64,000 nt of DNA from Haplodiscus bocki (lineage: Eukaryota). Shown piece after piece: positions 5,735 through 62,870 of the stretch. The position numbers and the translations under genes were made by a program. The stretch covers positions 22,506,001-22,570,000 of the forward strand of contig OZ296659.1 in assembly GCA_965655095.1 (NCBI GenBank), written 5' to 3'. A model generated the notes under the pieces. It made no database searches, was not told the origin of the DNA, and saw nothing but the letters and a program-made list of their open reading frames with translations. Numbering within the stretch: the first letter of the stretch is position 1; each line of letters begins with the position of its first letter.

Positions 5735-6259
5735 TCAACTTTTTCCCAGCGCTTTTTGTCTGGCTTTGAAAAAAGCCATGATATCTGCATCCGTTTTGGC
5801 ATCTCCGGTCAGAGGAATCCCGGGAGGAAGACTGACCTTGTTGTTATTAACACCAGACACTGGCCTATTAACACTGTGACTGATCATTTTCTGACTATCA
5901 CTATTTGCCCTTGAATGAGAGGATGAACCATCAGTTCCTCCGCCTGTACTTCCATTAGTGACGTAATAATCCCGCGAAACAGAGGGCGAAGTACTTATCC
6001 CAGGCAGCTGTGGGTGGGGGTTGATGGAAGATATACTACTGCGGGATAAACTACTGGAGGATGTAGGTTGGGTGTTGTTCCTCATATATGAAGTAGATCC
6101 AGAATTATAGTATTCCGAAGCTTGATTTGATTGGTGGAAATCATTTGATTGGTCTGTTCTTGATGGTTCTTTTGGAAGGTGATGACTTTCGTCACTGGCA
6201 TATCCGGAAGAAATCCGATGAACTTCTTCAGTTGTTTTTCTCTTTGCTTCTTCTTTGGC
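5735..6259 (-). CDS. KIF6: KIF6 terminal exon 12
   Basis: Acceptor tttcag at 6260-6265; C-terminal [21 protein letters not shown]; stop at 5735. Confidence 0.9.
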   Translation of the reverse strand, partial: AKEEAKRKTTEEVHRISSGYASDESHHLPKEPSRTDQSNDFHQSNQASEYYNSGSTSYMRNNTQPTSSSSLSRSSISSINPHPQLPGISTSPSVSRDYYVTNGSTGGGTDGSSSHSRANSDSQKMISHSVNRPVSGVNNNKVSLPPGIPLTGDAKTDADIMAFFKARQKALGKS

Positions 6260-35821: not shown

Positions 35822-36021
35822 NNNNNNNNNNNNNNNNNNNNNNNNNNNNNNNNNNNNNNNNNNNNNNNNNNNNNNNNNNNNNNNNNNNNNNNNNNNNNNN
35901 NNNNNNNNNNNNNNNNNNNNNNNNNNNNNNNNNNNNNNNNNNNNNNNNNNNNNNNNNNNNNNNNNNNNNNNNNNNNNNNNNNNNNNNNNNNNNNNNNNNN
36001 NNNNNNNNNNNNNNNNNNNNN
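35822..36021. other. Assembly gap (200 N)
   Basis: Run of N. Confidence 1.
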
Positions 36022-40125: not shown

Positions 40126-41245
40126 GCACTCTAAACAAAATCAAACAACACAATCAAGCTTTACCTTTTTAGCTGATTCTTTCATCCGTTTCGCTTTTTC
40201 TCTTTCTTTCTTTGATGGCTTGTTTTTCTTCTTTGGCTCGCACGGTTTGGATTTCTTATTGTTACTTTTATAAAAATTTTCTAAGTTCTTTCTGTGCCTC
40301 CAAACAGTTGAGAGCAATCGGGTTTCGAGTTCAATGGACGGGTGGGTTTGTTTCAGGTCGCGCAGAACTATGAAATCTTTACACTTGCGATGGAATAGAA
40401 GGTTTGATTTAACGTCTAGTACGGTATTTTTGCTCTCCAAGAATTCGCAAAAAATGTCAAGGGCTCCTTCACATCTACAATATACTACGGCTTCGATTCA
40501 ATGACTGAAGTCACGGAGTATTTGGAGTAACTTTTCAACACTCATGGCCCTCTACTGTACTATAACTCCAGTAGAGTAAGCTCTGATCCAGTATCTTTCG
40601 GCTAAGCACAAAGAAAACAAAGCCCCAAGGACGCATACTCGGGTAATCATTTTGAACTATTTATTAAGTATACCACAACAATTAGGCTATTGCCTAGAAT
40701 ACACACGCAAGAGTTAAACCATTACGCAGGCCATTAATTTGCATGTCCATTAATATGCAGGCGAGGTGGATACAACAGGAAAGATCCAAAAAAAATAAAA
40801 CATTTCAGAAACTGAAATTGTGGCAGCTTCTAGAAATTGCAATGGTAATTTGGGATTTCCGTACAAAAGTTTGAAAATCCTTGTCCTTTAAAGGTTGGTT
40901 TCGAAATTTTTCAGCGTTTTTTTTATGCTCGGATTCCACTGTTCTGCTCCATATTTTGTCTGCTATTTTCCACGTTGTAAAAAGTTCCGAAACTTTCAAA
41001 CCTTCGTTTGTTCCACGCGATGTGAATTCACCGCGGCAGATGTCCACAGCATTATCGCTAATCTATACTATTTTACTGATGGTTTGTTTTGCAGCCTTTT
41101 TAAATCCCAAGAACGTCACTAAATCCTTACCCGTTGCACCCTTGCCTTACGTCAAGCTGGTGCGCAAGCTAAGCTCAGGCAAGTTAGAGAAATATAGCAA
41201 TCCGACAGGCGTTTCCAAAAAGAGTTGCTATCAGTAGTGCTAAAC

Positions 41246-43437
41246 GTATTATTGTAAAAGGGGTTTGATGCTATTTTGGCTCTTTTGCAGTTTTTGCCCA
41301 ATCCAGAAAGTTTTGCAGTATTTCGACGAAGGAAACTTCACTGACACCCTAATGACAAGTGAGACCACAGAAGCGAACCCAAATTAGACTCGACAACTAA
41401 ATGCAATTTTCAACTCTCAATTCTAAAAGTTTCCAATTCGAAAAGTTCAAAGTACAAATTCAACTGAAAATGAAATTTTTTGACTAAGTACACATTGAGT
41501 AAACAAACTGTCATAATTCCTTGACAATGCAAATTTTCTACGTAGATTTGACAGTTGTACAATATTCTCTGGAATGTTTGTTCAATGGTTTTTTCCGATT
41601 GACATCGACAAGCGCGATCAAAGGCAATTAATTTTTTCAACTAAATAAATCATGCATTAGACTTAACGAGCCTAAAACTATAATGACGAACAACTAAGCG
41701 TTAGCATCGCATTACAAAAAACCAAGACACATTCTGAAAAAGCTGCGTCTTTGCAAAATCAATGACAAAGTGTGGATTTGAAATCCCGAGTTGTACCAAA
41801 CTGTTCGATAGCCTTGTGCAAGCCCGGAAACCTTTTGGAGGCATTTAAACATTACTACATTATTAGAAAAAACAAAAAATCTGTCTAAAAAAGCCGTACT
41901 TTTCATCAACCATTTCAAAAAAGTTATTTTACACAATGAGCCTCAAATAGGCAAGTACGTACAAGATGTACAGCTACCGAAAACCCCAAAGCCAATTGGC
42001 AAAAACAATTGACCGTTGGCTTCATGTTTCATAAAACCAGATTACCTTCCGAGAATGGCACGCTTCGACAAAAATATCAACGGTGAAGGTGTTTCTAGAT
42101 ATCCGAAATAGGTTAAATTTCTAACTTACAGCTTTCCAAAGGGCCGATAAGTGTATGTATATCAATGAAAGATTTTCTATTGAAAAAACGGAAACACAAA
42201 TTGGTCTGAAATGCCTTTTTTTGCAATTTTACATGAAAAAGTTGTTCTATAGCTCACACTTCACGTAAAAATTTTTTTAAAAGTTTAAATGAGCACATAA
42301 AACCATATTGGAAGATCATTCTGCACAAGTTCATCAACTCCGAAGCGCAAAAAAGTGAAAAAAAATCATTTTTGCAAGGTCACATCAAAAAACGCAAAGT
42401 GACTTGAATCAAACTTTCGTTGTATAAGTCGGGCGATCTCAGAAAAAGGATATGAAACACTGATTTTAGTCTCAAACTAATTTAATCTCAAACTTCTTCT
42501 CGAGATTGCGCACCTAATGCATTTTGCAGCAGAAATGTTTGTCGTCTTCCGAACGCAACTAATGATTTAAGGTAAAATATTGGGTGAGTCCAACAACCAT
42601 ATTGGGAGAAAAGGACGTATATTAGAACTCAGCCTAAACAAGAAGTCTTTCTGGAAAAAAGTTATGGTTTCGAGAACTTGACATCAAACTTTCCAAATTC
42701 AAACGTCCAAACATAACTGAAGTGAGATATTGCATTCTCGATCGAGCCCGAGCAGCAATGACAAGAATTTCCTTAATGGTTTATTATTTTTCGAAGAAAT
42801 GTTCAGCACTTCAACTACCAGTTGCAAAACAAGGAAGGGTTCAATTCAATCTGCTGAATCGTTCAGGATGTAGTTTTGTTCATGGAGAGGACATCAAAAA
42901 CGGTGGGTGTAGACATCCGTTATCGATTGAAATTTTGATTTCAAACAAGTTCGAGCTCGAAAACAAATTTTCAGACAGCAAAATGAAATTCTGTCTCAAC
43001 CAACTCTTGTTCAAAACTCTGTTCTCCCAAAAATTTACATTCACCGAAGGGTGAAATATAGGAACTAATGTTTGCTTTTAAAAAAGCAGAATTCGATATC
43101 CTATTCATGTCTTTTTTAACTTTTCTTAGGGACTTGATTTTTTCGGCAGTTTCTCATTGTATTCATGTCAAAATATTCACAGCAAAGTACCATAAAAGTG
43201 GCAAGCGGTGTAGAAAAAGTTTGCAATCACCTTTTAAAAAAAGAAACCTTGACAGAAAAGTTCTATGGAAAGCGATAATTTCCAGCGGCAGTTTTGAACA
43301 ATCAAAGTCCAATCAGCGGCTTTTTGCAAACTTCGCGTTTACAAAAATTTAGGGGCGTGAAAGTAGTATTCAAAACCGTTGCCACAAAAACAAGTTCATG
43401 TTTCATTTTCAACAGAGGATTAATTGATGAAACTCAC
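41246..43437 (+). repeat. Left terminal inverted repeat (~2.19 kb)
   Basis: Mirror ORFs 42722-43054 and 43068-43352 translate identically to 59492-59824 and 59194-59478. Confidence 0.95.
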
Positions 43438-44699
43438 ACGTGTGATACCAACAACAAACGTTCTTTTGATCTGAATGAATAGAAGAAACAGCGCTGTCTG
43501 AACTTCGAAAAGTTCGTCCACGGTGCTTCAACTTTTTCATCACACGAATCATTTATTCAAATGCGGTAAGAGATTCACAAGAGTCGGTTGAAAACATGAC
43601 ACTGTTGATGCGTTGAAACAAAACACTTAAACAAAAGTTTCCAGCTGTTGAAGCCAATCAATGTCCAAACAGCGCCTTTCTGGTGATTCAGATTTTGCAT
43701 TCCCAACACTATTGGAATATGGAAAACAAGTGCGTCCGTATAGTTTTGAAACTACTGCTGCAAAACCAAGCTATTGTTTTATTTCGATCAGCGGATCAAT
43801 TAATAAAACTCACATGTGTGATGGTAACAAGAAATATTCACTTATAATGAGTGAAAACAAGAAACCGCTGTTTGATTTTCTGAAAATTTAGCCATATTTT
43901 TTCAAATTTTATAACAAGCGAATCAATTTTTCACTTTAATTTAAGAATCCAAGAGTTCTAACTCAAAAGTTGAAATTTTCGATGCGTTGAAGCAAACTAC
44001 TGAAATTACTTCTGAAGAGTTATCGTCAGCAATTCAGTTTTCAAAATAAAACCGACCTCTTTTCCAGCTTGCCAATAAATTTAACTGTAATCTTACACAC
44101 GAAAGTTTACAAACTGAAACGTACCTGAAGTTTCTGATGCAGGACACCGGTTTAATGAGTGATAATTGAGAAAGACTTGACACCGTTAATTCAAAAACCA
44201 GAAATCATGAAAATGCCGGCTCCATTTAAAACGCTTCAGTTTGACATTATGCATCAAACATTTGTCTGGAAGCTTCAACAAGCAGAATTGCCAGCCTCAC
44301 TTGGAAAATTTAACACCCTGGACCTTTTAGTTTGCTTTCTGCTTTCCAATACGAAAGAAAGATTCGCTCCCTGATTCTGCTAAGCGGCTGAAGTCCGCAA
44401 TGCTATCCAAACTGAGAATCTCATCAACTTTTCAAGCGGTAGTGTACTTCAGAGCGTAACGAAGGTTGATGCCAACTTTGGGCAAGGCAGCGAGTGCATC
44501 TTATAACCTTTAGTTTGCGACGCTCTTTGCCAACCTCTCAACTATTTCACCTTGGAGAAAAGAATGAGCAACCTTGCACAAGTTATTATCGAACTTAGCC
44601 TATTTCTGCTTTGCGAGTTTCTTTGTAGTAACTCAGTACTACAAAGGAGAATTATTCGCTGTAACGAAGCTAGACAAGTTTGTCTATTCCCAAATTCAT

Positions 44700-47600
44700 A
44701 TTCGAGCAAATTCTAATTTAATTCAACATTGTACATCAGATTCAACCCTTTGAAAATAAACCAAAAATTAGCTTGATCTTTGTTGGTAAAATACAGCCTG
44801 AATAGTTGAACTTTTTCACTGCAGACAATGGATGTATCTTCCATTAACTCCCAATTCAGGTCTGAGGGTTTTCCAAACGGGCAGGAAAAAAATGAGCAAA
44901 GACTTCAAAACATCACGGAGCCAAAAATTAACAGTCTGGCCATGAAAATTTCTTCATTGCAGCTATCTGATTGGTTTTACTGAGTTGGAAGAACTGTTCC
45001 TTGATGTTACCCCGAGATGATTTCGTCGCCTTGAAGCTAAGTAGATAGTAAGGCCTAAGTGCTTAAACCTACAAAAAGTGTCCGTTGTTCCAACCAATTG
45101 AGGCTCATTAGAATCAATGGAACTTGAATGCCAATTGAGTGCCATCTTGAGGGCTTCCGTTCTGTGGGATAAATTTGGCAACCAACCAAAGTTGGAACCA
45201 GCGAGTGCTTCTGATATTTTTTTTATCAGGTTATATGCCACACTCTCTTAGAAAACCTTCGCATTATGAGTCGGATTGAGGATTGGGATTGAACCATGTT
45301 TGTTTTCAACATTGCTCAGCTATCATCAAAGCGTATGCAAAACACTCCAGTTGAAAGTTCAAGAAAGGACTTCCACAAAAGCAGCTGGAATTTCGAGCAA
45401 TAAATGTACTGGAAACGTGGAGACAAAAATTTCAATCGCTCGACCGACGTATTATTTCGGTTGGATCAAAGCATTGGAATTAATATTCGCTCAATTGATG
45501 TCTGTTTGGAACATTACAAAGTTTCGGTTTTTGAAAAACTCCAAACTTCACCCAAATGTGGAAACAAAGATCTTCAACTTTTATTCATCATGATTTTTCT
45601 CGTATTGAAATTGATTTTCCTCAGCTATTCATAGCAGGGTCTTGAGCGCTATCTGTCTGACAGCACTTCAAAATAAAGTCTCAATGAACTTAAGACATTG
45701 CGTTCGCTCTAGATATAAATTATTTGATTCATATTGGCACGGGAGAGCGTGAAAATAAGCGTCTAAATTTCCGCGCGAATAAAAACGGCATTTGGTAAAA
45801 TTGAGTTTTCACAGGACTCTGATTCAGCGGAAAAAACATGGAGATTTGTTTTGACCATACGGTAAACTGAAAAAGAGCTGCTTGTTCCACATCTTTTGAT
45901 CAAACAGTCATCCAATACGCAATACAATGCTGAGTCAGTAGCAAAAGATCAAAGTTGACAACTTCCAGCCATCAAAACGGGAAACATGCACAAATTGGGA
46001 GCAAAAAAACGCAATGCTGACTGCGAAAAACATAGGTGAACGACCTCTGCTAAAATCAAAGATTGAAAGATTTGGAATTGTTGAAATATTCATCGAAATT
46101 TTTCAAGAAGTTAATTTTGCAGACATTGAGGGAGATCAACTTTTGGATGACTTCACAGCTTCTGTGGAAAAATTGCTGATCGGAATGGCATAGTATCGAT
46201 GGCAGCACTTTGGAGCAACAAAAGTTTAATGGCCTTTAGAAAATCACTGAACCTCTGTCGCTCACGAACCCTCTGCCGAATAACATTTTCGTGCAAATTC
46301 TAATACTTTTTTTGTACATCAGACTGAACTCTATGAAAAAAAATCAAATTTCAGCTTGATCTTTGTGGGTAAAATGAAGCCTGAATATTTGGAGTTTTTC
46401 ACTGCAGACAGTGAATGTATCTTTCAAGAACTCAAGACTCAGGTCTGCGGGTGTTTTAACTGGGCGAATTTAACATGAGCAGAGATTTCAAAACATCACG
46501 GATCCAAAGTCCAACACTCTGGCCGTGAAAAATCTTTCATGCCAGTTATCTGATAGGTTGTACTGAGTTTGAAGCACTGTTCCTTGCTTTTACTCGGAGA
46601 TCATTTCGTCACCTTGAAACTAAGTAGATACTAAGGCATAAGTGCTTAAACCTACAAAAGGTATCCGATAGTCCAATTGATTGAGCCTCATTAAAATCAC
46701 TGGCATTAAAATCAAGTGGGCGAATATTAATTACAATAGTTTGATCCAACCAAAAAATACGTCAGTGGAACGTTTGAAGATTTCATCCCCGCGTTTCCAG
46801 TACAACTATTGTTCGAGATTCCAATTGATTTTGTGAGAGCCCCATCTTGATTTTTCAACTCGAGTGTTGTGCATACGTTTGATGTTAGCTGAACAATGTT
46901 GAGAACAAGCATGGTTCATTCCCAATCCTCAATCCGACTCATCATGTGAGGGTTTTCTAAGAGAGTGTGGCATATATGCCTGTTAAAAAAATTTCGCAGG
47001 TACGTTCGCCGTTTCAAATTTTGGTCCGTTGCCAAATTGTTCCCACAGAACGGAAACCATCAATATGATATTCAGTTGGCCTTGAATAGCCAGTGACTTT
47101 TACGAGCCTTGATCAATTGGACTAACGTATACATTTTAAAGTCATAAGCACTTATGCATTACTATCCACTTAGCTTCAAGGCAACGAAATCATGTCGGAG
47201 TAAAAACAGGGAACAGTTCTTCAAACTTAGTAAAACTTATCAGCTAACTGGCAAGAAAAGATGTTTCAAGGCCAGAGTGTTGCATTTTGGCTCCGTGATG
47301 TTTTGAACTCTCGGCTCATGTTAGTTTTGCCCACTTAAAACACCCGCAGACCTGAGTCGCGAGTTACTGAAAGATACATTCGTTGTCTGCAGCGAAAAAT
47401 TCCAACTATTCAGGCTTCACTTTATCCACAAAAATCAAGCTGAAGTTTGGTTTTTTTTTCAATGGGTTCAATCTGATGTACAATGAAAAAAAGTATTAGA
47501 ATTTGCACGAACATTTTCTTCGACAGAGGGTCCGTGAGCGACAAAGGTCAGTGATTTTTTGAGAGCCATGGAATTTTTGGTTGCTCAAGAGTGCTGCGAC

Positions 47601-50600
47601 CAATACGATGCCATTATGAGCAGCAATATTTCCACGGAAGCTGCGAAGTCATCCAAAACATGATCTCCGTCAACGTCTGCAAATTTTACTTCTTGAATTG
47701 CTTCGATGAATCTTTCAACAAATCCAAATCTTTTCAACTTGATTTTACCAGAGGTCGTTCACCTATGTTTTTTCGCAGTCAGCAGTGCGTTTTTTCTCTC
47801 CCAATTTGTGCATGTTTTCCGTTTTGATGGCTTGAAGTTGTCAACTATGATTTTTTGCTACTGACTTGCATTGTTTCGCGTATTGGATGAGTGTTCGGTC
47901 AGAATATATGGAACAAGCAGCTCTTTTTCATGTTACTGTATAGTCGGAACTAGTCTCGATGTTTTTTCTGCTGAATTCGAGTCCTGTGAAAACTCAATTC
48001 TACAAATGCCGTTTTTATTTGCGCCGTAAGCCGGGCGCTTTTTTTCACGCCTTCCAGTGCCAAATTGAACCAAATAGTTTTAAAACTAGAGCGAACGCAA
48101 AGTTTTCAGTTCATTGATGCTTTATTTGAAAGTGTTGTGTGACAGATAGAGCTCAAGATCCTACTATGAATAGCTGCGGAAACTCAATTTGAATACCAAG
48201 AAAAATCTTGATGAATAAAAGTTGAAGATGTTTGTTTCCACCTTTGGGCAAATTTTGGAGTTTTTCAAAAAATGAGACTTTGTAATGTTTCGAGACAGAC
48301 ATCAGTTGAGCGAATAATAATTCCAAAGGTTTCATCCAACCAAAAAATACGTCACTCGCGCTTGAAACTTTTATCATCACGTTTCAAGTACAACTATTGT
48401 TCGAGATTCCAATTGATTTTGTGAGAGCCCCATCTTGATTTTTCAACTTGAGTGTTGTGCATACGTTTGATGTTAGCTGAACAATGTTGAGAACAAGCAT
48501 GGTTTAATTCCAATCTTTTATCCGACTTATCATATCAGGGTTTTCTAGGAGAGTGTGGCATAAATGCTTGATAAAAAAAATTATCACAAGTTCTCGCTGG
48601 TTCATATTTTGGTTCGTTGCCAATTTTATCCCACAGAACGGAAACCCTCAAAATGACAATCAATTGGCATTTTAATGCCAGTGATTTTAATGAGCCTCAA
48701 TCAATTGGACTATCGGATACCTTTTGTAGGTTTAAGCACTTATGCCTTAGTATCTACTTAGTTTCAAGGTGACGAAATGATCTCCGAGTAAAAGCAAGGA
48801 ACAGTGCTTCAAACTCAGTACAACCTATCAGATAACTGGCATGAAAGATTTTTCACGGCCAGAGTGTTGGACTTTGGATCCGTGATGTTTTGAAATCTCT
48901 GCTCATGTTAAATTCGCCCAGTTAAAACACCCGCAGACCTGAGTCTTGAGTTCTTGAAAGATACATTCACTGTCTGCAGTGAAAAACTCCAAATATTCAG
49001 GCTTCATTTTACCCACAAAGATCAAGCTGAAATTTGATTTTTTTTCATAGAGTTCAGTCTGATGTACAAAAAAAAGTATTAGAAATTGCACGAAAATGTT
49101 ATTCGGCAGAGGGTTCGTGAGCGACAGAGGTTCAGTGATTTTCTAACGGCCATTAAACTTTTGTTGCTCCAAAGTGCTGCCATCGATACTATGCCATTCC
49201 GATCAGCAATTTTTCCACAGAAGCTGTGAAGTCATCCAAAAGTTGATCTCCCTCAATGTCTGCAAAATTAACTTCTTGAAAAATTTCGATGAATATTTCA
49301 ACAATTCCAAATCTTTCAATCTTTGATTTTAGCAGAGGTCGTTCACCTATGTTTTTCGCAGTCACCATTGCGTTTTTTTGCTCCCAATTTGTGCATGTTT
49401 TCCGTTTTGATGGCTTGAAGTTGTCAACTATGATTTTTTGCTACTGACTTGCATTGTTTTGCGTAATGGATGAGCGTTCGGTCAGAATATATGGAACAAG
49501 CAGCTCTTTTTCATGTTACTGTATAGTCGGAACTAGTCTCGATGTTTTTTCTGCTGAATTCGAGTCCTGTGAAAACTCAATTCTACAAATGCCGTTTTTA
49601 TTTGCGCCGTAAGCCGGGCGCTTTTTTTCACGCCTTCCAGTGCCAAATTGAACCAAATAGTTTTAAAACTAGAGCGAACGCAAAGTTTTCAGTTCATTGA
49701 TGCTTTATTTGAAAGTGTTGTGTGACAGATAGAGCTCAAGATCCTACTATGAATAGCTGCGGAAACTCAATTTGAATACCAAGAAAAATCTTGATGAATA
49801 AAAGTTGAAGATGTTTGTTTCCACCTTTGGGCAAATTTTGGAGTTTTTCAAAAAATGAGACTTTGTAATGTTTCGAGACAGACATCAGTTGAGCGAATAA
49901 TAATTCCAAAGGTTTCATCCAACCAAAAAATACGTCACTCGCGCTTGAAACTTTTATCATCACGTTTCAAGTACAACTATTGTTCGAGATTCCAATTGAT
50001 TTTGTGAGAGCCCCATCTTGATTTTTCAACTTGAGTGTTGTGCATACGTTTGATGTTAGCTGAACAATGTTGAGAACAAGCATGGTTTAATTCCAATCTT
50101 TTATCCGACTTATCATATCAGGGTTTTCTAGGAGAGTGTGGCATAAATGCTTGATAAAAAAAATTATCACAAGTTCTCGCTGGTTCATATTTTGGTTCGT
50201 TGCCAATTTTATCCCACAGAACGGAAACCCTCAAAATGACAATCAATTGGCATTTTAATGCCAGTGATTTTAATGAGCCTCAATCAATTGGACTATCGGA
50301 TACCTTTTGTAGGTTTAAGCACTTATGCCTTAGTATCTACTTAGTTTCAAGGTGACGAAATGATCTCCGAGTAAAAGCAAGGAACAGTGCTTCAAACTCA
50401 GTACAACCTATCAGATAACTGGCATGAAAGATTTTTCACGGCCAGAGTGTTGGACTTTGGATCCGTGATGTTTTGAAATCTCTGCTCATGTTAAATTCGC
50501 CCAGTTAAAACACCCGCAGACCTGAGTCTTGAGTTCTTGAAAGATACATTCACTGTCTGCAGTGAAAAACTCCAAATATTCAGGCTTCATTTTACCCACA

Positions 50601-53600: not shown

Positions 53601-56600
53601 TGACTCCGTGATGTCTTGAAGTCTTTGCTCATATTATTTTTGCCCGGTTGAAAAACCCGCAGACCTGAATCGGGAGCTACTGAAAGATACATTCATTGTT
53701 TGCATTGAAAAACTCCAACTGTTCAGGTTTCATTTTACCCACAAAGATCAAGCTGAAATTTGGTTTAATTTCAATGGGTTCATTCTGATGTACAATGAAA
53801 AAAAGTATTAGAAATTGCACGAAAAAATTCTTCGACAGAGGGTCCGTGAGCGACAAAGGTTTAGTCATTTTTTGAGAGCCATTGAATTTTTGGTTACTCA
53901 AGAGTGCTGCGATCAATACGATGCCATTATGATCAGCACTATATCCACAGAAGCTGCGGAGTCATCCAAAAGTTGATCTCCCTCAAGGTCTGCAAAAGAT
54001 ACTTCTTGAAAAGCTTCGATGAATATTTCAACAACTCCAAATCTTTCAATCTCTGGTTTTAGCTGAGGTCGTTCACTTTTGTTTTTCGAAGTCAGCATTG
54101 CATTTTTTTGCTCTCAATTTCTGCATGTTTCCCGTTTTGATGGCTTGAAGTTGTCAACTATGATCTTTTGCTACTGACTCAGCATTGTTCCGTGTATTGG
54201 ATGAGTGTTCGGTCAGAAGATATGGAACAAGCAGCTCTTTTTCATGTTACTGTATAGTCGAAACTAGTATTGATGCTTTCTCCGCTATTTCTCCGTTATT
54301 GTTTCCGCCGTAAACCAGACGCTTTTTTCACGCCTTCCATTGCCAATATGAACCAAATAGTTTTAAAACTAAAATGAACGCTGAGTATTAATTTCTTTGA
54401 GACTATAGTTGAAAGTGCTGTCAGATAGATAGAGCTCAGGACCCTACTTTGAGTAGCTACGGAAATTCAATTTCAATACCAGAAAAATTAGGATGATAAA
54501 AAGTTTAAGATGTTTGTTTCCACTTTTGGGCGAAGTTTGGAGTTTTTCAATAGCTGAAACCTTGTAATGTTTGCAGACAGACATCAGTTGAGTGAATAAT
54601 AATTCCAAAGGTTTCACCCAAACAAAAAATACGTCACTCGCGCTTGAAACTTTTATCCCCACGTTTCAAGTACATTTATTGTTCGAGATTCCACCTGTGT
54701 TTTTGTGAAGGTCCTTTCTTAAATTTCAACTCAATTTTTGTGCATACGCTTTGATGCTAGCTGAGCAAGGTTGAGAACAAACATGGTTCTTTCCTAATCC
54801 TCAATCCGACTCAAACTGAGAGTGTTTTCCAAGAGGGTGTCGCATACAAGCCTGATAAAAAACTTTATCACAAGCACTCGCTGGTTCAAACTTTGGTTCG
54901 TTGCCAAAATAATCTCACAAAACGGAAACCCTCAAAATGGCAATTAATTCGCATTTAAAAACCAGTGATTTTAATGAGCCTCAATCAGATGGACTAACGG
55001 ATACTTTTTGTAGGTTTAAGCACTTAAGCCTTACTATCCACGTAGCTTCAAGGCTACGAAATCATTTCGGAGTAAAAGCAAGGAAAAGTTCTTCAAACTC
55101 AGTATAATCTATCAGATAGCTGGAATGAGAAAATTTTTCATGGCCAGAATGTTGATTTTTGACTCCGTGATGTCTTGAAGTCTTTGCTCATATTATTTTT
55201 GCCCGGTTGAAAAACCCGCAGACCTGAATCGGGAGCTACTGAAAGATACATTCATTGTTTGCATTGAAAAACTCCAACTGTTCAGGTTTCATTTTACCCA
55301 CAAAGATCAAGCTGAAATTTGTTTTAATTTCAATGGGTTCAATCTGATGTACAATGAAAAAAAAATTAGAATTTGCACGAAAATTTTCTTCGACATAGGG
55401 TTCGTGAGCGACAAAGGTTTAGTGATTTTTTGAAAGCCTTTGAATTTTTGGTTGCTCAAGAGTGCTGCAATCAATACTAAGCCATTCTGATCAGCAATAT
55501 ATCCACAGAAGCTGCGAAGTCATCCAAAAGTTGATCTCCCTCAAGGTCTGCAAAAGATACTTCTTGAAAAGCTTCGATGAATATTTCAACAACTCCAAAT
55601 CTTTCAATCTTTGATTTTAGCTGAGGTCGTTCACTTATGTTTTTCGCAGTCAGCATTGCAATTTTTTGCTCTCAATTTCTGCATGTTTCCCGTTTTGATG
55701 GCTTGAAGTTGTCAACTATGATTTTTTGCTACTGACTTGCATTGTTCCGCGTATTGGATGAGTGTTCGGTCAGAATATATGGAACAAGCAGCTCTTTTTC
55801 ATGTTACTGTATAGTCGGAACTAGTCTCGATGTTTTTTCTGCTGAATTCGAGTCCTGTGAAAACTCAATTCTACAAATGCCGTTTTTATTTGCGCCGTAA
55901 GCCGGGCGCTTTTTTTCACGCCTTCCAGTGCCAAATTGAACCAAATAGTTTTAAAACTAGAGCGAACGCAAAGTCTTTAGTTCATTGATGCTTTATTTGA
56001 AAGTGTTGTGTGACAGATAGAGCTCAGGATCCTACTATGAATAGCTGCGGAAACTCAATTTGAATACCAAGAAAAATCTTGATGAATAAAAGTTGAAGAT
56101 GTTTGTTTCCACATTTGGGCGAATTTTGGAGTTTTTCAGTAACTGAAACTTTGTAATGTTTCGAGACAGACATCAGTTGAGCGAATAAAAATTCCAAAGG
56201 TTTCATTCAACCAAAAAATACGTCACTCGCGCTTGAAACTTTCATCCCCACGTTTCAAGTACAAATATTGCTCGAGATTCCACCTGTGTTTTTGTGAAAG
56301 TCCTTTCTTGAATTTTCAAATCGAGTTTTGTGCATACGCTTTGATGCTAGCTGAGCAAGGTTGAGAACAAACATGGTTCTTTCCCAATCCTCAATCCGAC
56401 TCAAAATGAGAGTGTTTTCTAAGAGGGTGTGGCATATATGCCTGATAAAAAAATCATCACAAGCACTCTCTGGTTCAAACTTTGGTTCGTTGCCAAATTA
56501 ACCTCACAAAACGGAAGCCCTCAAAATGGCAATTAATTCGCATTTAAAATCCAGTGATTTTAATGAGCCTCAATCAGATGGACTAACGGATACATTTTGT

Positions 56601-58555
56601 AAGTTTAAGCACTTAAGCCTTATTATCTACGTAGCTTCAAGGCTACGAAATCATTTCGGAGTAAAAGCAAGGAAAAGTTCTTCAAACTCAGTATAATCTA
56701 TCAGATAGCTGGAATGAGAAAATTTTTCATGGCCAGAATGTTGATTTTTGACTCCGTGATGTCTTGAAGTCTTTGCTCATATTATTTTTGCCCGGTTGAA
56801 AAACCCGCAGACCTGAATCGGGAGCTACTGAAAGATACATTCCTTGTTTGCATTGAAAAACTCCAACTGTTCAGGTTTCATTTTACCCACAAAGATCAAG
56901 CTGAAATTTGGTTTAATTTCAATGGGTTCAATCTGATGTACAATGAAAAAAAAATTAGAATTTGCACGAAAATTTTCTTCGACAGAGGGTTCGTGAGCGA
57001 CAAAGGTTTAGTGATTTTTTGAAAGCCTTTGAATTTTTGGTTGCTCAAGAGTGCTGCAATCAATACTAAGCCATTCTGATCAGCAATATATCCACAGAAG
57101 CTGCGAAGTCATCCAAAAGTTGATCTCCCTCAAGGTCTGCAAAAGATACTTCTTGAAAAGCTTCGATGAATATTTCAACAACTCCAAATCTTTCAATCTT
57201 TGATTTTAGCTGAGGTCGTTCACTTATGTCTTTCGCAGTCAGCATTGCATTTTTTTGCTCTCAATTTCTGCATGTTTCCCGTTTTGATGGCTTGAAGTTG
57301 TCAACTATGATTTTTTGCTACTGACTTGCACTGTTTCGCGTATTGGATGAGTGTTCGGTCAGAATATATGGAACAAGCAGCTCTTTTTCATGTTACTGTA
57401 TAGTCGGAACTAGTCTCGATGTTTTTTCTGCTGAATTCGAGTCCTGTGAAAACTCAATTCTACAAATGCCGTTTTTATTTGCGCCGTAAGCCGGGCGATT
57501 TTTTTCACGCCTTCCAGTGCCAAATTGAACCAAATAGTTTTAAAACTAGAGCGAACGCAAAGTCTTTAGTTCATTGATGCTTTATTTGAAAGTGTTGTGT
57601 GACAGATAGAGCTCAGGATCCTACTATGAATAGCTGCGGAAACTCAATTTGAATACCAAGAAAAATCTTGATGAATAAAAGTTGAAGATGTTTGTTTCCA
57701 CATTTGGGCGAATTTTGGAGTTTTTTAGTAACTGAAACTTTGTAATGTTTCGAGACAGACATCAGTTGAGCGAATAATAAATCCAAAGGTTTCATTCAAC
57801 CAAAAAATACGTCACTCGCGCTTGAAACTTTCATCCCCACGTTTCAAGTACAATTATTGCTCGAGATTCCACCTGTGTTTTTGTGAAAGTCCTTTCTTGA
57901 ATTTTCAAATCGAGTTTTATGCATACGCTTTGATGCTAGCTGAGCAAGGTTGAGAACAAACATGGTTCTTTCCCAATCCTCAATCCGACTCAAAATGAGA
58001 GTGTTTTCTAAGAGGGTGTGGCATATATGCCTGATAAAAAAATCATCACAAGCACTCTCTGGTTGAAACTTTGGTTCGTTGCCAAATTAACCTCACAAAA
58101 CGGAAACCCTCAAAATGGCATTTAATTGGCATTTAGTATCCAGTGTTTTTATTGAGCCTCAATCAGATGGACTAACGGATACATTTTGTAGGTTTAAGCA
58201 TTTATGCCTTACTATCTACTTAGCTTCGGGGCGACGAAATCATCTAGGAGTAAAAGCAAGGAACAGTTCTTCAAACTCAATCTAACCTATCAGATAGCTG
58301 GAATAAGAAAATTTTTCATGGCCAGAGTGTTGATTTTTGACTCTGTGATGTCTTGAAGTCTTTGCTCATATTAATTTGGCCCGTTCGAAAAACCCGCAGA
58401 CATGAATCGGGAGCTGTTGAAAGATACATTCATTGTCTGCAGTGAAAAACTCCAAGTATTCAGGCTGTATTTTACCCACAAAGATCAAGCTGAATTTTGG
58501 TTTTCTTTTCAAAGGGTTGAATCTGATGTACAATGTAAAAATGTATTAGAATTTG
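44700..58555. repeat. ~1.56-1.59-kb macrosatellite array, ~1.3 units in one orientation then ~7.5 units inverted (switch ~46712)
   Basis: Landmark gatagagctca recurs near 48145, 49728, 51310, 52868, 54428, 56017, 57606; ORF-track offsets 1583, 1560, 1589. Confidence 0.95.
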
Positions 58556-59108
58556 CTCTATTATGAATTTAGGAAGAGAAAAAAAGTTGTCTGGCTGCCT
58601 TACAGCGAATATTTTTTCTTGTAGTACTGAGGTACTACAAAGACGTTGGCAAACCGGAAATAAGCTATGTTTGATGATTTCTTGCGAAGGGTTGCTCATT
58701 CTTTTCTCTAAGGTGAAATTGTTGAGAGGTTGGCGGACAGCGTTGCAAACTTTAGGTTTCGGGTTGTACTCGCTGCCTTGCCCAAAGTTGGCATCGCCCT
58801 TTGTTATGCTCTGAAGTAAACTACCGTTTGAAAATTTGAGGAGCTTCTCAGTTTGGATAGCATTGCGTACTTCAACCCCTTTACAGAGTCAGGGAGCGTC
58901 CCTTTCTTTGGTATTGGAAGGCAGAAAGCAAACGAGAAGGTCCAGGGTGTTAAATGTTCCAAGTGAGGCTGGCACTTTTTCTGGTTGAGGCATCCATACA
59001 ATTATTTGATGCATAATGTCAAACTAAAGCGTTTCAAATGCAGCCGGGTTTTTCAAGGTTTCTGGTTTATGGATTAACTGTGTCAAGTCTTTCTCATCAA
59101 TTAATCAA

Positions 59109-61300
59109 GTGAGTTTCATCAATTAATCCTCTGTTGAAAATGAAACATGAACTTGTTTTTGTGGCAACGGTTTTGAATACTACTTTCACGCCCCTAAATT
59201 TTTGTAAACGCGAAGTTTGCAAAAAGCCGCTGATTGGACTTTGATTGTTCAAAACTGCCGCTGGAAATTATCGCTTTCCATAGAACTTTTCTGTCAAGGT
59301 TTCTTTTTTTAAAAGGTGATTGCAAACTTTTTCTACACCGCTTGCCACTTTTATGGTACTTTGCTGTGAATATTTTGACATGAATACAATGAGAAACTGC
59401 CGAAAAAATCAAGTCCCTAAGAAAAGTTAAAAAAGACATGAATAGGATATCGAATTCTGCTTTTTTAAAAGCAAACATTAGTTCCTATATTTCACCCTTC
59501 GGTGAATGTAAATTTTTGGGAGAACAGAGTTTTGAACAAGAGTTGGTTGAGACAGAATTTCATTTTGCTGTCTGAAAATTTGTTTTCGAGCTCGAACTTG
59601 TTTGAAATCAAAATTTCAATCGATAACGGATGTCTACACCCACCGTTTTTGATGTCCTCTCCATGAACAAAACTACATCCTGAACGATTCAGCAGATTGA
59701 ATTGAACCCTTCCTTGTTTTGCAACTGGTAGTTGAAGTGCTGAACATTTCTTCGAAAAATAATAAACCATTAAGGAAATTCTTGTCATTGCTGCTCGGGC
59801 TCGATCGAGAATGCAATATCTCACTTCAGTTATGTTTGGACGTTTGAATTTGGAAAGTTTGATGTCAAGTTCTCGAAACCATAACTTTTTTCCAGAAAGA
59901 CTTCTTGTTTAGGCTGAGTTCTAATATACGTCCTTTTCTCCCAATATGGTTGTTGGACTCACCCAATATTTTACCTTAAATCATTAGTTGCGTTCGGAAG
60001 ACGACAAACATTTCTGCTGCAAAATGCATTAGGTGCGCAATCTCGAGAAGAAGTTTGAGATTAAATTAGTTTGAGACTAAAATCAGTGTTTCATATCCTT
60101 TTTCTGAGATCGCCCGACTTATACAACGAAAGTTTGATTCAAGTCACTTTGCGTTTTTTGATGTGACCTTGCAAAAATGATTTTTTTTCACTTTTTTGCG
60201 CTTCGGAGTTGATGAACTTGTGCAGAATGATCTTCCAATATGGTTTTATGTGCTCATTTAAACTTTTAAATTAATTTTTCACGTAAAGTGTGAGCTATAG
60301 AACAACCTTTTCATGTGAAATTGCAAAAAATGCCTTTCAGACCAGTTTGTGTTTCCGTTTTTTCAATAGAAAACTTTTCCTTGTTATACATACACTTGTC
60401 GGCCTTTTGGAAAGCTGTACATTAGAAATTTAATCTTTTTCGGACATCTAGAAACACCTTCACCGTTGATATTTTTGTCGAAGCGTGCCATTTTCGGAAG
60501 GTAATCTGTTTTTATGAAACATGAGGCCAACGGTCAATTGTTTTTGCCAATTGGTTTTGGGGTTTTTTGGTAGCTGTACACTTTGTACGTACTTGCTTAA
60601 TTCAGGCTGAAGGTGTAAAATAACTTTTTTGAAATGGTTGATGAAAAGTACGGCTTTTTTAGACAGATTTTTTGTTTTCTCTAATATTGTAGTAACGTTT
60701 AAAGGCCTCCAAAAGGTTTCTGGGCTTGCACAAGGCTATCGAATAGTTTGGTACAACTCAGGGGTTCAAAGCCACACTTTGTCATTGATTTTGCAAAGAC
60801 ACGGCTTTTTCATAACATGTCTTGGTTTTTTGTAATGCGATACTGCAGCTTAGTTGTTCGTAAGTATAGTTTTAGGCTCGTTAAGTCTAATGCATGATAT
60901 ATTTAGTTGAATAAATTAACTGCCTTTGATCGCGCTTGTCGATTTGAATCGGAAAAAACCATTGAACAAATATTCCAGAGAATATTGAACAACTGTCAAA
61001 TCTACGTAGAAAATTTTCATTGTCAAGGAATTTTGACAGTTTGTTTACTCAATGTGTACTTAGTCAAAAAATTTCATTTTCAGTTGAATTTGTGCTTTGA
61101 ACTTTTCGACTTGGAAACTTTTAGATTTGAGAGTTGAAAATTGCATTTAGCTGTCGAATCTAATTTGGGTTCGCTTCTGTGGTCTCACTTGTCATTAGGG
61201 TGTCAGTGAAGTTTCCTTCGTCGAAATACTGCAAAACTTTCTTGATTGTGCAAAAGCAGCAAACGAGCCAAAATATCACTAACCCCCCATACAATACTAC
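59109..61300 (-). repeat. Right terminal inverted repeat (~2.19 kb)
   Basis: Reverse complement of the left TIR; homology ends at ...acaatactac. Confidence 0.95.
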
Positions 61301-62870
61301 TGCTAAAGTTGTAAAAGGGTGTGTCGAGAGGCTCTCTTCTCGCAGCCCGTTTTCCAGTGCTACTGGACTTGTTAGTCCAAATTCGGTTAGTTTGGCCGGC
61401 GCACCGCATGGATTAATTAATTTTTGTTTATCCAAAACGTCAGCGGAGATGAATTCAAGAAATGAACGTTTTGATGCTCTTTGGTGGTTAAATTGGGTCG
61501 TTGCAACGTTACTTGTTGACATCTACTAAGAAGCTAGTGTTCGGTGCAAGCAGATTGCTGCCCTATTTTGTCCGCTCTAGTTAATTCGCACGCTCATTTG
61601 TTCGCTACAGCTTTCGCGCAGCTACTGTTGGGTTCGACAGTGGGTATGTTTTAACTAACCAGCTTTCCGTCGGTTTTCTACGGACCAGCTTTAACCAGCT
61701 TTCTGGTCAAAAAACCAGATAACGGCGAGTTTCGCCCAACAGTCAGTGTTTATTTATAAGGGGTATTTAAGCTAAAAGAGAAGTCGGCCAATTGCTTTGT
61801 GCCTGAATTCTTCAAATTTAATTTTAACACGCTAACGCTCTTCTAAGAATAAAGAAAGCTATTTATTTCTCAACTCTGAATTAAACTCTCAAGAAACTCC
61901 CCACAATAATGCTGTTTTTCCTACGTTCTGAGGAGAACTATAATTCTCATCACAGCCTGAGCACAAGTCGTAATCTTCTTCATGCTCCTCCTCACAAACT
62001 AGATCAGTATTATCATGCTTATCATCATCATCATCATCAATACCAGTGGGAGCATTATTCCGTTTCTCTTCTCCAATTTCTAAAATTTCCATCTTTCTGA
62101 AAAACCTCTCGGTGGCCCCATTGGCGCGAATAAGTAATTGTCGCAGTATATCCGCGAAGCCTACGGGCACACAGAAAAACAAGGACATCCCCAGATTGCC
62201 TGAAAATTAGAAGAAACTGTATCTATACTTTAGACTATTCCATTTCCATTCATATAATAATATTGCAGTAATATATCATTGCTTTTACATGTAGTTGATA
62301 CGTATCAAATACGTATCACTCCCCAGTACATTTTCATGCAAATTCTACGTATTTTATACGTAGCACTCCCGTGTACTGAACCAAACTGGGACGGAACTTT
62401 TACGTAACGAACACGTACCTACCTAGCAGCTACTCTAAGCTAGGAATGAATATTTTGTTACGTACGCGTTACGAGGCTACCGATCTGGTGACGTCACAAA
62501 ACTTTCAACCAATCCGCTGTGCTTTTGCGCTGTTTCACTTTGGACGGACACGGGACGTCTACGTAGCCACCAGAATCATTCTCCTCATTAGTACTGCGGA
62601 AGGCAGTGCTACAGGCGGCTACGTAGTCGCCACGGAACGCTCCGGCCAAATTGAGGCGTGAGCTAGTAAAAACGTGGAACGGGCTAAGAAAAAGAAGAAA
62701 AAGCCTAGTTTCGTTCCAAAAGTGATTATAATCGATGCAATAGTATTACCAAGCATGTAATTATGATTTTCTATGATTATTTTAGTATATTTTACCTAAT
62801 TTTGGTGCATTTTTCAATACTTTCCTCTTATGGAAAGTCTTTCTTATTATTGGTTTATGTTGTTATTTAT

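What the first reader, a model, noticed from the sequence alone, without database searches (positions are those of the whole stretch)
41238..61308. 20-kb foldback element carrying a 1.58-kb macrosatellite array, inserted as one unit with an 8-bp TSD
Seen: ~2.19-kb TIRs that end at the same base on both sides (GTAKTATTGTA...), flanked by tgctaaac and tgctaaag. Inverted homology continues inward into ~9 tandem 1.58-kb units, and I found no transposase. Known: foldback transposons (Drosophila FB, Galileo, Tetris) have modular TIRs whose inner tandem repeats can seed satellite DNA, typically with repeat units of tens to hundreds of bp. Inference: a giant non-autonomous DNA transposon that both builds and moves kb-scale macrosatellite, mobilised in trans by an 8-bp-TSD transposase (hAT, P, Merlin or Zisupton-like; not assignable here).
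Basis: partly seen in the sequence, partly recalled or inferred. Interest (0 to 1): 0.8.

Follow-up and report, generated by a model that had tools for sequence, protein, structure and literature searches.

The report
Gene-less Maverick palindrome with internal array
The 20-kb structure is real, but it is an old, gene-less, palindromic hanger-on of the virus-like Maverick/Polinton transposons, with a 6-base rather than 8-base target duplication, and one 1.58-kb inner segment has been multiplied about nine times at this locus only.

Summary
There are 2.19-kb inverted ends (96.3% identical), 7.5 direct and 1.6 mirrored units of about 1.58 kb, and no coding capacity.

The target duplication was misread. 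All 24 family ends examined have an A before GTAGTA, so the tip is 5'-AGTAGTATTGTAAG(G)n. The element spans 41245-61301 and its duplication is 6 bp (gctaaa). Seven sister elements and two relatives also show 6-bp duplications.

A 6-bp duplication with an (AGT)2 tip is the Maverick/Polinton signature (PMC8097293). Coding Mavericks in this genome carry a protein-primed polymerase (pPolB) and an rve integrase. They share the tip and about 155 bp of the end, at up to 95% identity to sister elements and 83-87% to this copy.

The element belongs to a family of 8.6-13.5-kb gene-less palindromes. In six of eight elements the two arms are each other's closest relatives. A 10.4-kb copy-back derivative of a coding Maverick, with its own 6-bp duplication, shows how such palindromes can arise.

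The 1.58-kb array is confined to this locus. Another family member carries a different array (3.22-kb unit).

So hAT, P, Merlin and Zisupton are rejected. "Builds arrays" is supported; "moves them" is unproven.

The scan has already noted Polinton-ended palindromes elsewhere in this genome. Read support could not be obtained.

The parts
41239..41244 (.). Left copy of the 6-bp target-site duplication (gctaaa).
   Evidence: Read directly from the sequence. The frame is fixed by the invariant A that precedes GTAGTA in 24 of 24 family ends.
41245..41574 (+). Left tip and conserved terminal region. The tip is mutated: CGTATTATTGTA instead of AGTAGTATTGTA.
   Evidence: 83-85% identical to the first ~320 bp of the sister elements, against 70-75% further in. 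Between elements the terminal 330-400 bp is 89% conserved, against 72-80% inside. About 150 bp is homologous to coding Maverick ends.
41245..43437 (+). Left 2.19-kb inverted end (outer part of the short arm).
   Evidence: Pairs with 61301-59109 at 96.3%. The inner 1,171 bp is 100% identical.
43438..44166 (+). Left-arm-only segment made of ~365-bp subrepeats. The right arm has only 12 bp at this position.
   Evidence: Matches the 365-bp tandem region of E1, E2, E4 and E6. It has no partner in the self-comparison.
44167..46710 (-). About 1.6 units of the 1.58-kb repeat in mirror orientation (inner part of the short arm).
   Evidence: 84.9% identical to the reverse complement of 56548-59096. The stretch 45933-46712 is 98-100% identical to the reverse complement of 48669-49449 and 50252-51032.
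46710..46711 (.). Turn-round point of the palindrome. It is an abrupt, asymmetric join with no spacer.
   Evidence: On the E2 arm scale it joins position ~5104 to position ~5460 of the opposite sense.
46711..59096 (+). Direct tandem array of about 7.5 units of 1559-1590 bp. The outermost ~2.5 kb of it pairs with the left-arm units.
   Evidence: Repeat families D1-D13 and the self-BLAST. Units are 82-98% identical and neighbours are the most alike. All ten copies of the 860-bp A module (eight here, two in the left arm) form one clade apart from the other elements.
59109..61301 (-). Right 2.19-kb inverted end, with an intact tip (reverse complement AGTAGTATTGTATGGGGGG).
61302..61307 (.). Right copy of the 6-bp target-site duplication (gctaaa).

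Best explanation
The element (called W here) spans window 41245-61301. It is an old, now immobile copy of a gene-less palindromic family that parasitises the Maverick/Polinton virus-like transposons of this genome.

**How it works (part shown, part inferred)**
- The family keeps only the Maverick terminal ~155 bp, within its own ~330-bp conserved end.
- It is inferred to be integrated by a Maverick rve integrase supplied in trans, which would account for the 6-bp duplication.
- Each member has two mirror-image arms because it descends from, or is regenerated by, a copy-back event. In such an event replication starting at one end turns round and copies back to the same end, so both termini become identical valid ends.

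**Architecture of this copy**
- A 5.5-kb short arm (41245-46710) is joined to a 14.6-kb long arm (46711-61301).
- The extra ~9.8 kb is a tandem amplification of a 1.58-kb segment lying next to the palindrome centre, and it is private to this lineage.
- Afterwards the arms and units kept exchanging sequence by gene conversion, which would explain the 100% identical tracts.
- The left tip has decayed.
For: **Tip and duplication**
- An A precedes GTAGTA in 24 of 24 ends.
- The 6-bp duplications are: W gctaaa; E1 agtgtg; E2 gaggct; E3 ttcatt; E4 taggtc/tcggtc (5 of 6); E5 cttcct; E6 accatt; E7 aacggg; F1 ttcgtc; P1 gatgtg.
- PMC8097293 reports (AGT)2//(ACT)2 end motifs and perfect 6-bp duplications for vertebrate Mavericks.

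**Helper candidates**
- The exact 17-base tip occurs at 98 genomic sites and at none for the reversed control.
- F1 (L044+L045, 14.4 kb) encodes pPolB (PF03175, 2.7e-20) and rve (7.3e-9). It also gives weak A32-type ATPase, capsid and C48-protease matches.
- pPolB lies inside nine tip pairs of 13.9-14.9 kb; none was listed in the 15.6-kb pair.
- F2 (L050+L051) is colinear with F1. Its terminal 155 bp is 87-95% identical to the ends of the sister elements and 83-87% to those of W.

**Family membership**
- W is homologous over whole arms (70-75%) to seven elements of 8.6-13.5 kb. Six are near-complete palindromes without long open reading frames; E3 is rearranged.

**Arm homogenisation**
- Left and right arms of the same element are sisters, with 100/100 support, in six of eight elements. 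Stems are 0.06-0.18 and tips 0.001-0.03. E6 is unresolved and E3 unreliable.

**Copy-back shown directly**
- P1 (L046+L047) consists of 6.1 kb of the F1-type pPolB end inverted, joined to 4.2 kb of the same end direct. It is 97% identical to F1, its arms are 98.9% identical, and it has its own duplication.

**Array private to this locus**
- Unit 24-mers with at most one mismatch occur only here.
- The ten copies of the A module form one clade.
Against: - No read-level check of the assembly was possible. The 100% identical tracts and the unit count are therefore unverified.
- The flanks are unique in the genome, so no empty site was found.
- The arms beyond ~155 bp show no DNA or translated similarity to the two Mavericks examined. 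The origin of the arm sequence is unknown.
- Mobilisation by the Maverick integrase is inferred from tip and duplication only.
- Arm homogenisation could come from in-place gene conversion rather than copy-back regeneration. Differing turn-round points could equally be central deletions of one ancestral 13.7-kb palindrome.
- F2 shows no matching duplication.
- Only eight elements were sampled out of a family with about 1,100 first-look candidates.
Confidence: 0.78

Rival explanations
1. This is a foldback transposon of the FB/Galileo type, mobilised in trans by a transposase that makes 8-bp duplications (hAT, P, Merlin or Zisupton).
For: - The shape fits: very long inverted ends, internal tandem repeats and no transposase.
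- The flanking 8-mers match at 7 of 8 positions.
Against: - The 8-mer match comes from a 6-bp duplication plus one coincidentally matching flank base.
- The base before GTAGTA is A in 24 of 24 ends, so it belongs to the element.
- Ten elements fit a 6-bp duplication. An 8-bp reading fails in E6, E1, E2 and E3.
- The tip is the Maverick (AGT)2 motif and is shared with pPolB/rve-coding elements.
Confidence: 0.03
2. Assembly artefact. The palindrome, or the number of units, was produced by chimeric foldback reads or by collapse or expansion of repeats.
For: - There are 100% identical tracts: 1,171 bp in the ends, and 406 bp present three times.
- A 200-N gap lies 5 kb upstream, and a perfect 1,150-bp tandem duplication lies at 25.6-27.9 kb.
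- Sister elements E1-E3 have gaps at their centres.
- Reads could not be examined.
Against: - The outer ends are only 92-93% identical and the mirrored units about 85%. A foldback read artefact would give nearly identical arms.
- Both ends carry proper tips and a matching 6-bp duplication.
- The same architecture recurs without gaps in E4-E7 and P1, with arm identities of 75-99%.
Confidence: 0.07
3. In-place origin. An ordinary element or host segment was turned into a palindrome and array at this locus by replication-fork template switching or break repair. It was not inserted as a ready-made palindrome.
For: - In-place gene conversion clearly acts here, as the 100% tracts show.
- Inverted duplications by fork template switching are well documented (PMC10766183, listed).
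- An earlier scan note (s1-382603) judged one other palindrome in this genome to be an ordinary inverted duplication.
Against: - Both outer ends are family tips flanked by one 6-bp duplication. An in-place inverted duplication of a one-ended insert would not recreate this.
- Six of the seven other sampled family members, at unrelated loci, are near-complete palindromes with their own duplications.
- The array itself may well have grown in place, and that part is compatible with the main explanation.
Confidence: 0.07
4. Sub-question. The 1.58-kb array already existed when the element integrated, so the element carried it in, rather than the array growing after insertion.
For: - The deepest splits between units (~0.2 changes per site; 82-85% identity) exceed the left-right divergence of the outer ends (~0.08).
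- Both arms contain units in mirror image.
- The short-arm-plus-long-arm layout matches the copy-back products P1, E4 and E5.
Against: - The ends have demonstrably been converted (100% tract), so their divergence underestimates age.
- Neighbouring units are the most alike, as expected from stepwise growth in place.
- The mirrored outer units are less alike (~85%) than the ends.
- No second array-bearing copy was found.
Confidence: 0.4

Closest known systems
Maverick/Polinton self-synthesising virus-like transposons (Kapitonov & Jurka 2006; Pritham et al. 2007; vertebrate survey PMC8097293)
   Same: - 6-bp target duplication.
- 5'-(AGT)2...(ACT)2-3' tips.
- About 155 bp of terminal sequence shared with pPolB- and rve-coding elements of the same genome.
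   Different: - No genes at all.
- The arms beyond ~155 bp are unrelated to the two Mavericks examined.
- The whole element is a palindrome with 5-6-kb arms, instead of short inverted ends of 130-180 bp.
- In the held literature I found only a passing mention of 'non-autonomous polintons', applied to the Tlr1 elements (PMC5499653), and no description of palindromic ones.
Copy-back and snap-back defective viral genomes: review PMC13506859; AAV snapback genomes PMC8235507; adenovirus incomplete-particle genomes, Daniell 1976. The adenovirus details are from memory and from a reference list only.
   Same: - Both ends derive from one genome end in inverted orientation.
- Coding capacity is partly or wholly lost.
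- Dependence on a helper for replication is presumed.
- P1 in this genome has exactly this topology relative to a coding Maverick.
   Different: - These copies are integrated in a chromosome with target duplications.
- They form a long-lived, diversified genomic family (subfamilies differ by 25-30%), not transient by-products of an infection.
- No extrachromosomal form has been observed.
Foldback transposons (Drosophila FB, Galileo, Tetris)
   Same: - Very long inverted ends with internal tandem repeats.
- Usually non-coding.
- Able to give rise to tandem arrays.
   Different: - Different tips and duplication length. From memory, FB makes 9 bp and Galileo 7 bp.
- Repeat units here are 0.37 to 3.2 kb rather than tens to hundreds of bp.
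- The mobiliser is a retroviral-type integrase of a virus-like element, not a P-type or unknown transposase.
Large chromosomal palindromes kept alike by arm-to-arm gene conversion, and central-deletion 'revision' of long palindromes. This comparison is from established knowledge and was not checked in papers here.
   Same: - 100% identical tracts sit inside otherwise 92% identical arms.
- Asymmetric centres differ between copies.
   Different: - Those palindromes are not mobile.
- They have no defined tips or target duplications.

Membership tests
Maverick/Polinton (as a non-autonomous derivative) | 6-bp target-site duplication | tested here: met
   W has gctaaa on both sides. Nine other elements with these tips show matching 6-bp flanks, eight perfect and one 5 of 6; F2 shows none.
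Maverick/Polinton (as a non-autonomous derivative) | 5'-AG...CT-3' tips, here the (AGT)2//(ACT)2 end motif | tested here: met
   24 of 24 family ends begin AGTAGTA or a one-base variant. The motif is quoted in PMC8097293. W's left tip is mutated and its right tip is intact.
Maverick/Polinton (as a non-autonomous derivative) | Encodes protein-primed PolB and an rve integrase | tested here: not met
   No open reading frame longer than 138 aa, no Pfam match, and no translated similarity to F1 open reading frames. It is therefore not a Maverick proper and can at most be a dependent derivative.
Maverick/Polinton (as a non-autonomous derivative) | Shares its ends with coding elements in the same genome | tested here: met
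   F1 and F2 carry pPolB (and F1 rve). Their tip and ~150-155 bp are homologous to W and to the E elements. pPolB lies inside nine tip pairs of 13.9-14.9 kb.
Maverick/Polinton (as a non-autonomous derivative) | Mobilised in trans by the Maverick integrase and replicated by pPolB | not testable with these tools
   Inferred from the tips and the duplication length only.
hAT / P / Merlin / Zisupton non-autonomous element | 8-bp target-site duplication | tested here: not met
   The duplication is 6 bp in W. An 8-bp reading fails in E1, E2, E3 and E6.
Foldback transposons (FB / Galileo type) | Long modular inverted ends with internal tandem repeats and no coding capacity in most copies | tested here: met
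   The arms contain 365-bp and 1.58-kb repeats.
Foldback transposons (FB / Galileo type) | Family-specific tips and duplication length (FB 9 bp, Galileo 7 bp; values from memory) | tested here: not met
   6-bp duplication and Maverick-type tips.
Copy-back / snap-back defective genome of a protein-primed replicon | Both ends are the same genome end, in inverted orientation, joined at an asymmetric turn-round | tested here: met
   W has a 5.5-kb arm and a 14.6-kb arm joined at 46710|46711. P1 shows this topology directly relative to F1.
Copy-back / snap-back defective genome of a protein-primed replicon | Sequence is derived from the helper genome | tested here: inconclusive
   True for P1 (97% identical to F1). 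For W and the E family only the terminal ~155 bp is Maverick-like.
Copy-back / snap-back defective genome of a protein-primed replicon | Generated by a polymerase template switch during replication | not testable with these tools
   The sister-arm tree and the differing turn-round points are compatible with it. So are gene conversion and central deletion.
Macrosatellite | Tandem array of kilobase-size units | tested here: met
   About 7.5 direct units of 1559-1590 bp.
Macrosatellite | Copy-number polymorphism, or arrays at several loci | tested here: not met
   W-type unit words occur only at this locus. Polymorphism could not be tested.

The most novel reading that the evidence does not exclude
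The gene-less palindromes may be a self-perpetuating lineage of snap-back 'satellite' genomes of endogenous Maverick viruses.

- Each round of propagation would regenerate one arm from the other through a hairpin or copy-back intermediate. This would explain why left and right arms stay near-identical while lineages diverge by 25-30%.
- The turn-round region would be a hot spot where kilobase-unit tandem arrays are born and can then be carried into new loci.
- That would make a virus-like protein-primed replicon a source of both large chromosomal palindromes and macrosatellites in an animal genome.
Probability: 0.3. Interest if true: 0.8.

Novelty: new variant of a known kind. Interest (0 to 1): 0.6.

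Why it matters
**Gap in the literature.** Mavericks/Polintons are usually described as 15-20-kb coding elements. Dependent, gene-less derivatives are barely documented, and I found no description of palindromic ones in the held literature.

**Cis requirements and defective genomes.** A diversified family of 9-20-kb palindromes that uses Maverick tips would show that these virus-like elements need only ~155-330 bp of terminal sequence in cis. It would also show that defective copy-back genomes, known from virus cultures, can enter the germ line and persist as a repeat family.

**Genome structure.** Such elements plant long palindromes in chromosomes. These are fragile, recombinogenic and hard to assemble. 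This copy, and the one at C2:86.66 Mb, show that they also grow kilobase-unit tandem arrays.

**Practical use.** Reading the duplication as 6 bp with an AGTAGT tip gives annotators a simple rule. It lets them classify what would otherwise be called unknown foldback DNA or misassembly.

Tried and rejected
- **Tandem Repeats Finder** found nothing because its longest period is 500 bp. The array was shown by the repeat finder and self-BLAST instead.
- **Empty site.** Both 400-bp flanks are unique in the genome apart from a ~90-bp short repeat 300 bp to the right, so no paralogous empty site exists.
- **Bulk fetch.** Only two coding Mavericks, one copy-back form and one second array were read.
- **Coding remnants in the arms.** tblastn of all F1 open reading frames against W and E1-E7 gave no hit. 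Pfam on the two longest W open reading frames and Rfam on the whole element also gave nothing.
- **Flip-flop loop.** I tested whether the two unit variants differ by an inverted linker, which would be a hairpin flip-flop signature. They are colinear with indels, so the idea was dropped.
- **Microhomology at the turn-round** 46710|46711: none is evident.
- **Longer likeness to coding Mavericks.** An earlier scan note claimed kilobase-long similarity. With F1 and F2, homology stops at ~150-155 bp, so I could not reproduce it with these two copies.
- **Daniell 1976** (adenovirus incomplete particles) is not held. That comparison rests on memory.
- **The large protein searches** were not used.
Full report

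Yes. A self-comparison of the window gives the following.
- An inverted pair: 41246-43437 against 61300-59109 (2,194 bp, 96.3%).
- Further inverted homology: 44167-46707 against 59096-56548 (84.9%).
- A ladder of direct repeats from 46711 to about 59100.

The repeat families have start-to-start spacings of 1559-1590 bp. There are about 7.5 direct units, and about 1.6 further units in mirror orientation at 44167-46710. Orientation changes abruptly at 46710|46711, with no spacer and no evident microhomology.

Within the ends, the outer ~1 kb is 92-93% identical. The inner 1,171 bp is 100% identical.

Units are 82-98% identical to one another and neighbours are the most alike.

The element has no coding or known RNA content.
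- No stop-free frame exceeds 138 aa.
- The two longest frames have no Pfam match.
- There is no Rfam family.
- There is no translated similarity to the open reading frames of Maverick copy F1.

Tandem Repeats Finder is blind to this period.

**2. The target duplication is 6 bp, not 8 bp**

The genome (1.5 Gb; the window is C12:22,506,001-22,570,000) holds many copies of the terminal ~320 bp. There were 1,114 first-look candidates.

In 24 of 24 ends with a readable tip, the base before GTAGTATTGTA is A. The tip is therefore 5'-AGTAGTATTGTAAG(G)n. In this frame:
- the element spans 41245-61301;
- its first base has mutated (C for A, and CGTATT for AGTAGT);
- the duplication is gctaaa (41239-41244 and 61302-61307), a perfect match.

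Seven complete sister elements were fetched (E1-E7). Their 6-bp duplications are agtgtg, gaggct, ttcatt, taggtc/tcggtc, cttcct, accatt and aacggg. An 8-bp reading fails in several of them.

**3. What family is it?**

A 6-bp duplication with (AGT)2//(ACT)2 end motifs is what the vertebrate Maverick survey used to recognise Mavericks (PMC8097293).

*The tip in the genome.* The exact 17-base tip occurs at 98 sites, and at none for the reversed control. Many sites form + / - pairs, which fall into two size classes.

*The larger class.* Ten pairs measure 13.9-15.6 kb. I read two coding elements.
- F1 (C2:68,104,470-68,118,911; L044+L045).
  - It has open reading frames matching protein-primed PolB (PF03175, 2.7e-20) and rve integrase (7.3e-9).
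  - It gives weak matches to an A32-type ATPase, a capsid N-terminal domain and a C48 protease.
  - Several genes are split over more than one frame.
  - Its duplication is ttcgtc and its inverted ends are ~130 bp.
- F2 (C6:60,418,703-60,433,622; L050+L051).
  - It was found through an E-type end motif.
  - It is colinear with F1 at 76-80%.
  - Its terminal 155 bp is 87-95% identical to the E-family ends and 83-87% to those of W.
  - It shows no matching duplication.
- A search with the F1 polymerase places pPolB inside nine of these pairs (13.9-14.9 kb). None was listed in the 15.6-kb pair. It also reports 20,775 first-look candidates genome-wide.

*The smaller class.* These elements measure 8.6-13.5 kb (E1-E7) and have no long open reading frames. 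Six are palindromes almost from end to end, with arms of 3-6 kb at 75-99.6% identity; E3 is rearranged.

W is homologous to them along its whole arms, at 70-75% inside and 83-86% over the first ~320 bp. Between elements the terminal 330-400 bp is 89% conserved, against 72-80% inside. This suggests a cis-acting end.

Homology between the palindromes and F1 or F2 stops at ~150-155 bp, and there is no translated similarity.

W is thus a member of a gene-less palindromic family that shares only the Maverick end. Among the 12 paired E/W-type elements located, W is the longest. The excess is the array.

**4. How do such palindromes arise and persist?**

Three results bear on this.

(a) *A copy-back form derived directly from a coding Maverick.* P1 (C3:56,814,071-56,824,482; L046+L047) is 10.4 kb long.
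- It consists of 6.1 kb of the pPolB end of an F1-type Maverick in inverted orientation, joined to 4.2 kb of the same end in direct orientation.
- It is 97% identical to F1 and its arms are 98.9% identical.
- It has its own 6-bp duplication, gatgtg.
- This is the topology of a copy-back defective genome, and it was integrated as a unit.

(b) *Sister arms.* In a maximum-likelihood tree of the first 3 kb of every arm, the left and right arm of the same element are sisters with full support in W, E1, E2, E4, E5 and E7.
- Stems of 0.06-0.18 lead to each pair, and tips are 0.001-0.03. E6 is unresolved and E3 is rearranged.
- If both arms were simply inherited as double-stranded DNA, they should have diverged from each other as much as the lineages have.
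- Something re-equalises the arms along each propagating lineage. Candidates are regeneration of one arm from the other (copy-back, or a single-strand hairpin with mismatch correction) and arm-to-arm gene conversion.
- Old dead copies such as E6 (arms 75-88%) show that conversion in place does not keep arms alike indefinitely. W's 100% tract shows that it does occur.

(c) *Differing turn-round points.* On a common arm coordinate they are E5 6511|3492, E4 5248|7346, E7 6721|6377, E2 7278|6820 and E6 7319|7342. This fits repeated copy-back events. It fits equally well asymmetric central deletions of an ancestral ~13.7-kb palindrome, and I cannot separate the two.

Integration by a Maverick integrase and replication by pPolB are inferences from the tips and the duplication. 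The trinucleotide reiteration at the tip is what jump-back protein priming requires in adenovirus. That point comes from established knowledge and was not tested.

**5. The array**

*What the unit is.* It corresponds to the part of the family arm just outside the palindrome centre, about positions 4722-6225 of E2.
- Relative to E2 and E6, the ~430-bp inner piece lies in the opposite sense to the ~860-bp outer piece.
- The unit can therefore also be read as a centre with an asymmetric deletion.

*How the units relate.*
- All ten copies of the 860-bp piece in W form one fully supported clade apart from every other element. All duplications therefore happened in the W lineage.
- They fall into three groups. 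Two adjacent copies are identical, and a third copy on the other arm is nearly so.
- This points to stepwise local amplification with ongoing conversion.

*Was the array carried in?*
- The deepest splits (~0.2) exceed the divergence of the outer ends (~0.08). This hints that a short array was already present when the arms were last identical.
- Because the ends have themselves been converted, this is weak evidence.

*Is the array found elsewhere?*
- Two 24-mers present in six or seven W units occur, with at most one mismatch, only at this locus.
- The closest foreign ends among the best-scoring matches are only ~84% identical.
- There is therefore no sign that an array-bearing copy moved again or seeded a dispersed satellite.

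*Do other members grow arrays?*
- At C2:86,664,500-86,681,000 (L048+L049), a 3,220-bp unit built from inner arm sequence is repeated at least 3.1 times at 99.5-99.7% identity. It lies next to an arm that runs out to a family tip, and the array abuts an assembly gap.
- Hit spacings suggest further arrays at C1:187.15 Mb (~2.1 kb) and of tips at C5:101.22 Mb (2.47 kb). These were not examined.

**6. Rivals**

- *The 8-bp-duplication superfamilies* are excluded by section 2.
- *A pure assembly artefact* is unlikely. The arms are 85-93% identical over most of their length, both ends carry tips with a matching duplication, and gap-free relatives share the architecture.
  - A scaffold gap (35822-36021) and a perfect 1,150-bp duplication (25593-27901) lie nearby.
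- *An in-place inverted duplication* does not explain two tips and one duplication, nor the same shape at unrelated loci.

**7. Relation to what is known, and to this scan**

- The held literature describes Mavericks as coding elements with short inverted ends (PMC6431247, PMC8097293).
- "Non-autonomous polintons" appear only in passing, applied to the Tlr1 elements (PMC5499653).
- I found no palindromic derivatives described.
- Copy-back and snap-back defective genomes are well known for viruses (PMC13506859, PMC8235507), but not as integrated, long-lived genomic families.
- This scan has already noted Polinton-ended palindromes elsewhere in this genome: 13 notes, including s1-364322 and s1-381276, which were followed up.
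- I reached the 6-bp and Maverick reading before seeing those notes, and I tested it independently here.
- New here are the array-bearing member, the second array, the sister-arm tree and the P1 copy-back form.

**8. Verdict**

- The structure is real.
- It is a non-autonomous palindromic derivative of Maverick/Polinton elements, carrying a private 1.58-kb tandem array.
- Novelty: a new variant of a known kind.
- Interest: 0.6.

Noticed in passing
L046+L047 (G000:C3:56,814,071-56,824,482): A 10.4-kb copy-back derivative of a coding Maverick. It consists of 6.1 kb of the pPolB end inverted, joined to 4.2 kb of the same end direct. It is 97% identical to F1, its arms are 98.9% identical, and its 6-bp duplication is gatgtg.
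   Followed up: yes
L048+L049 (G000:C2:86,664,500-86,681,000): A second family member with an internal kilobase-unit array. The unit is 3,220 bp, repeated at least 3.1 times at 99.5-99.7% identity, made of inner arm sequence. It abuts a 200-N gap and is followed by an arm that runs out to a family tip.
   Followed up: partly
G000:C5:101,208,581-101,239,790: The exact 17-base tip occurs twice on the + strand and six times on the - strand. Most of the - strand copies are spaced 2.47 kb apart (one interval is double), so this looks like a tandem array of units that contain the tip.
   Followed up: no
G000:C1:187,152,182-187,157,255: Three same-strand matches to the W unit lie ~2.1 kb apart, 10-15 kb inside a family tip at 187,167,757. 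This may be a third array-bearing member.
   Followed up: no
window 25593-27901: A perfect (100%) tandem duplication of 1,150 bp. Each copy holds a 378-aa open reading frame with a reverse-transcriptase domain (RVT_1, 1.1e-30). It is either a very recent duplication or an assembly artefact.
   Followed up: partly
window 35822-36021: A 200-N assembly gap about 5 kb upstream of the element.
   Followed up: no
E1-E7 tips (L031-L043): The tip is followed by a G run of very variable length (4 to 16 G) between copies, and even between the two ends of one element.
   Followed up: no
L050+L051 (G000:C6:60,418,703-60,433,622): A coding Maverick (F2) whose ends are the closest to the palindrome family (87-95% over 155 bp). 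It shows no matching target duplication, which may reflect recombination between two copies.
   Followed up: partly
L035+L036 (E3, G000:C9:47,583,203-47,594,186): This element has a third, internal copy of the end next to an assembly gap, and rearranged arms. It may be nested, recombined or misjoined.
   Followed up: no
whole genome: The pPolB search returned 20,775 first-look candidates, so Mavericks appear unusually abundant in this 1.5-Gb genome.
   Followed up: no
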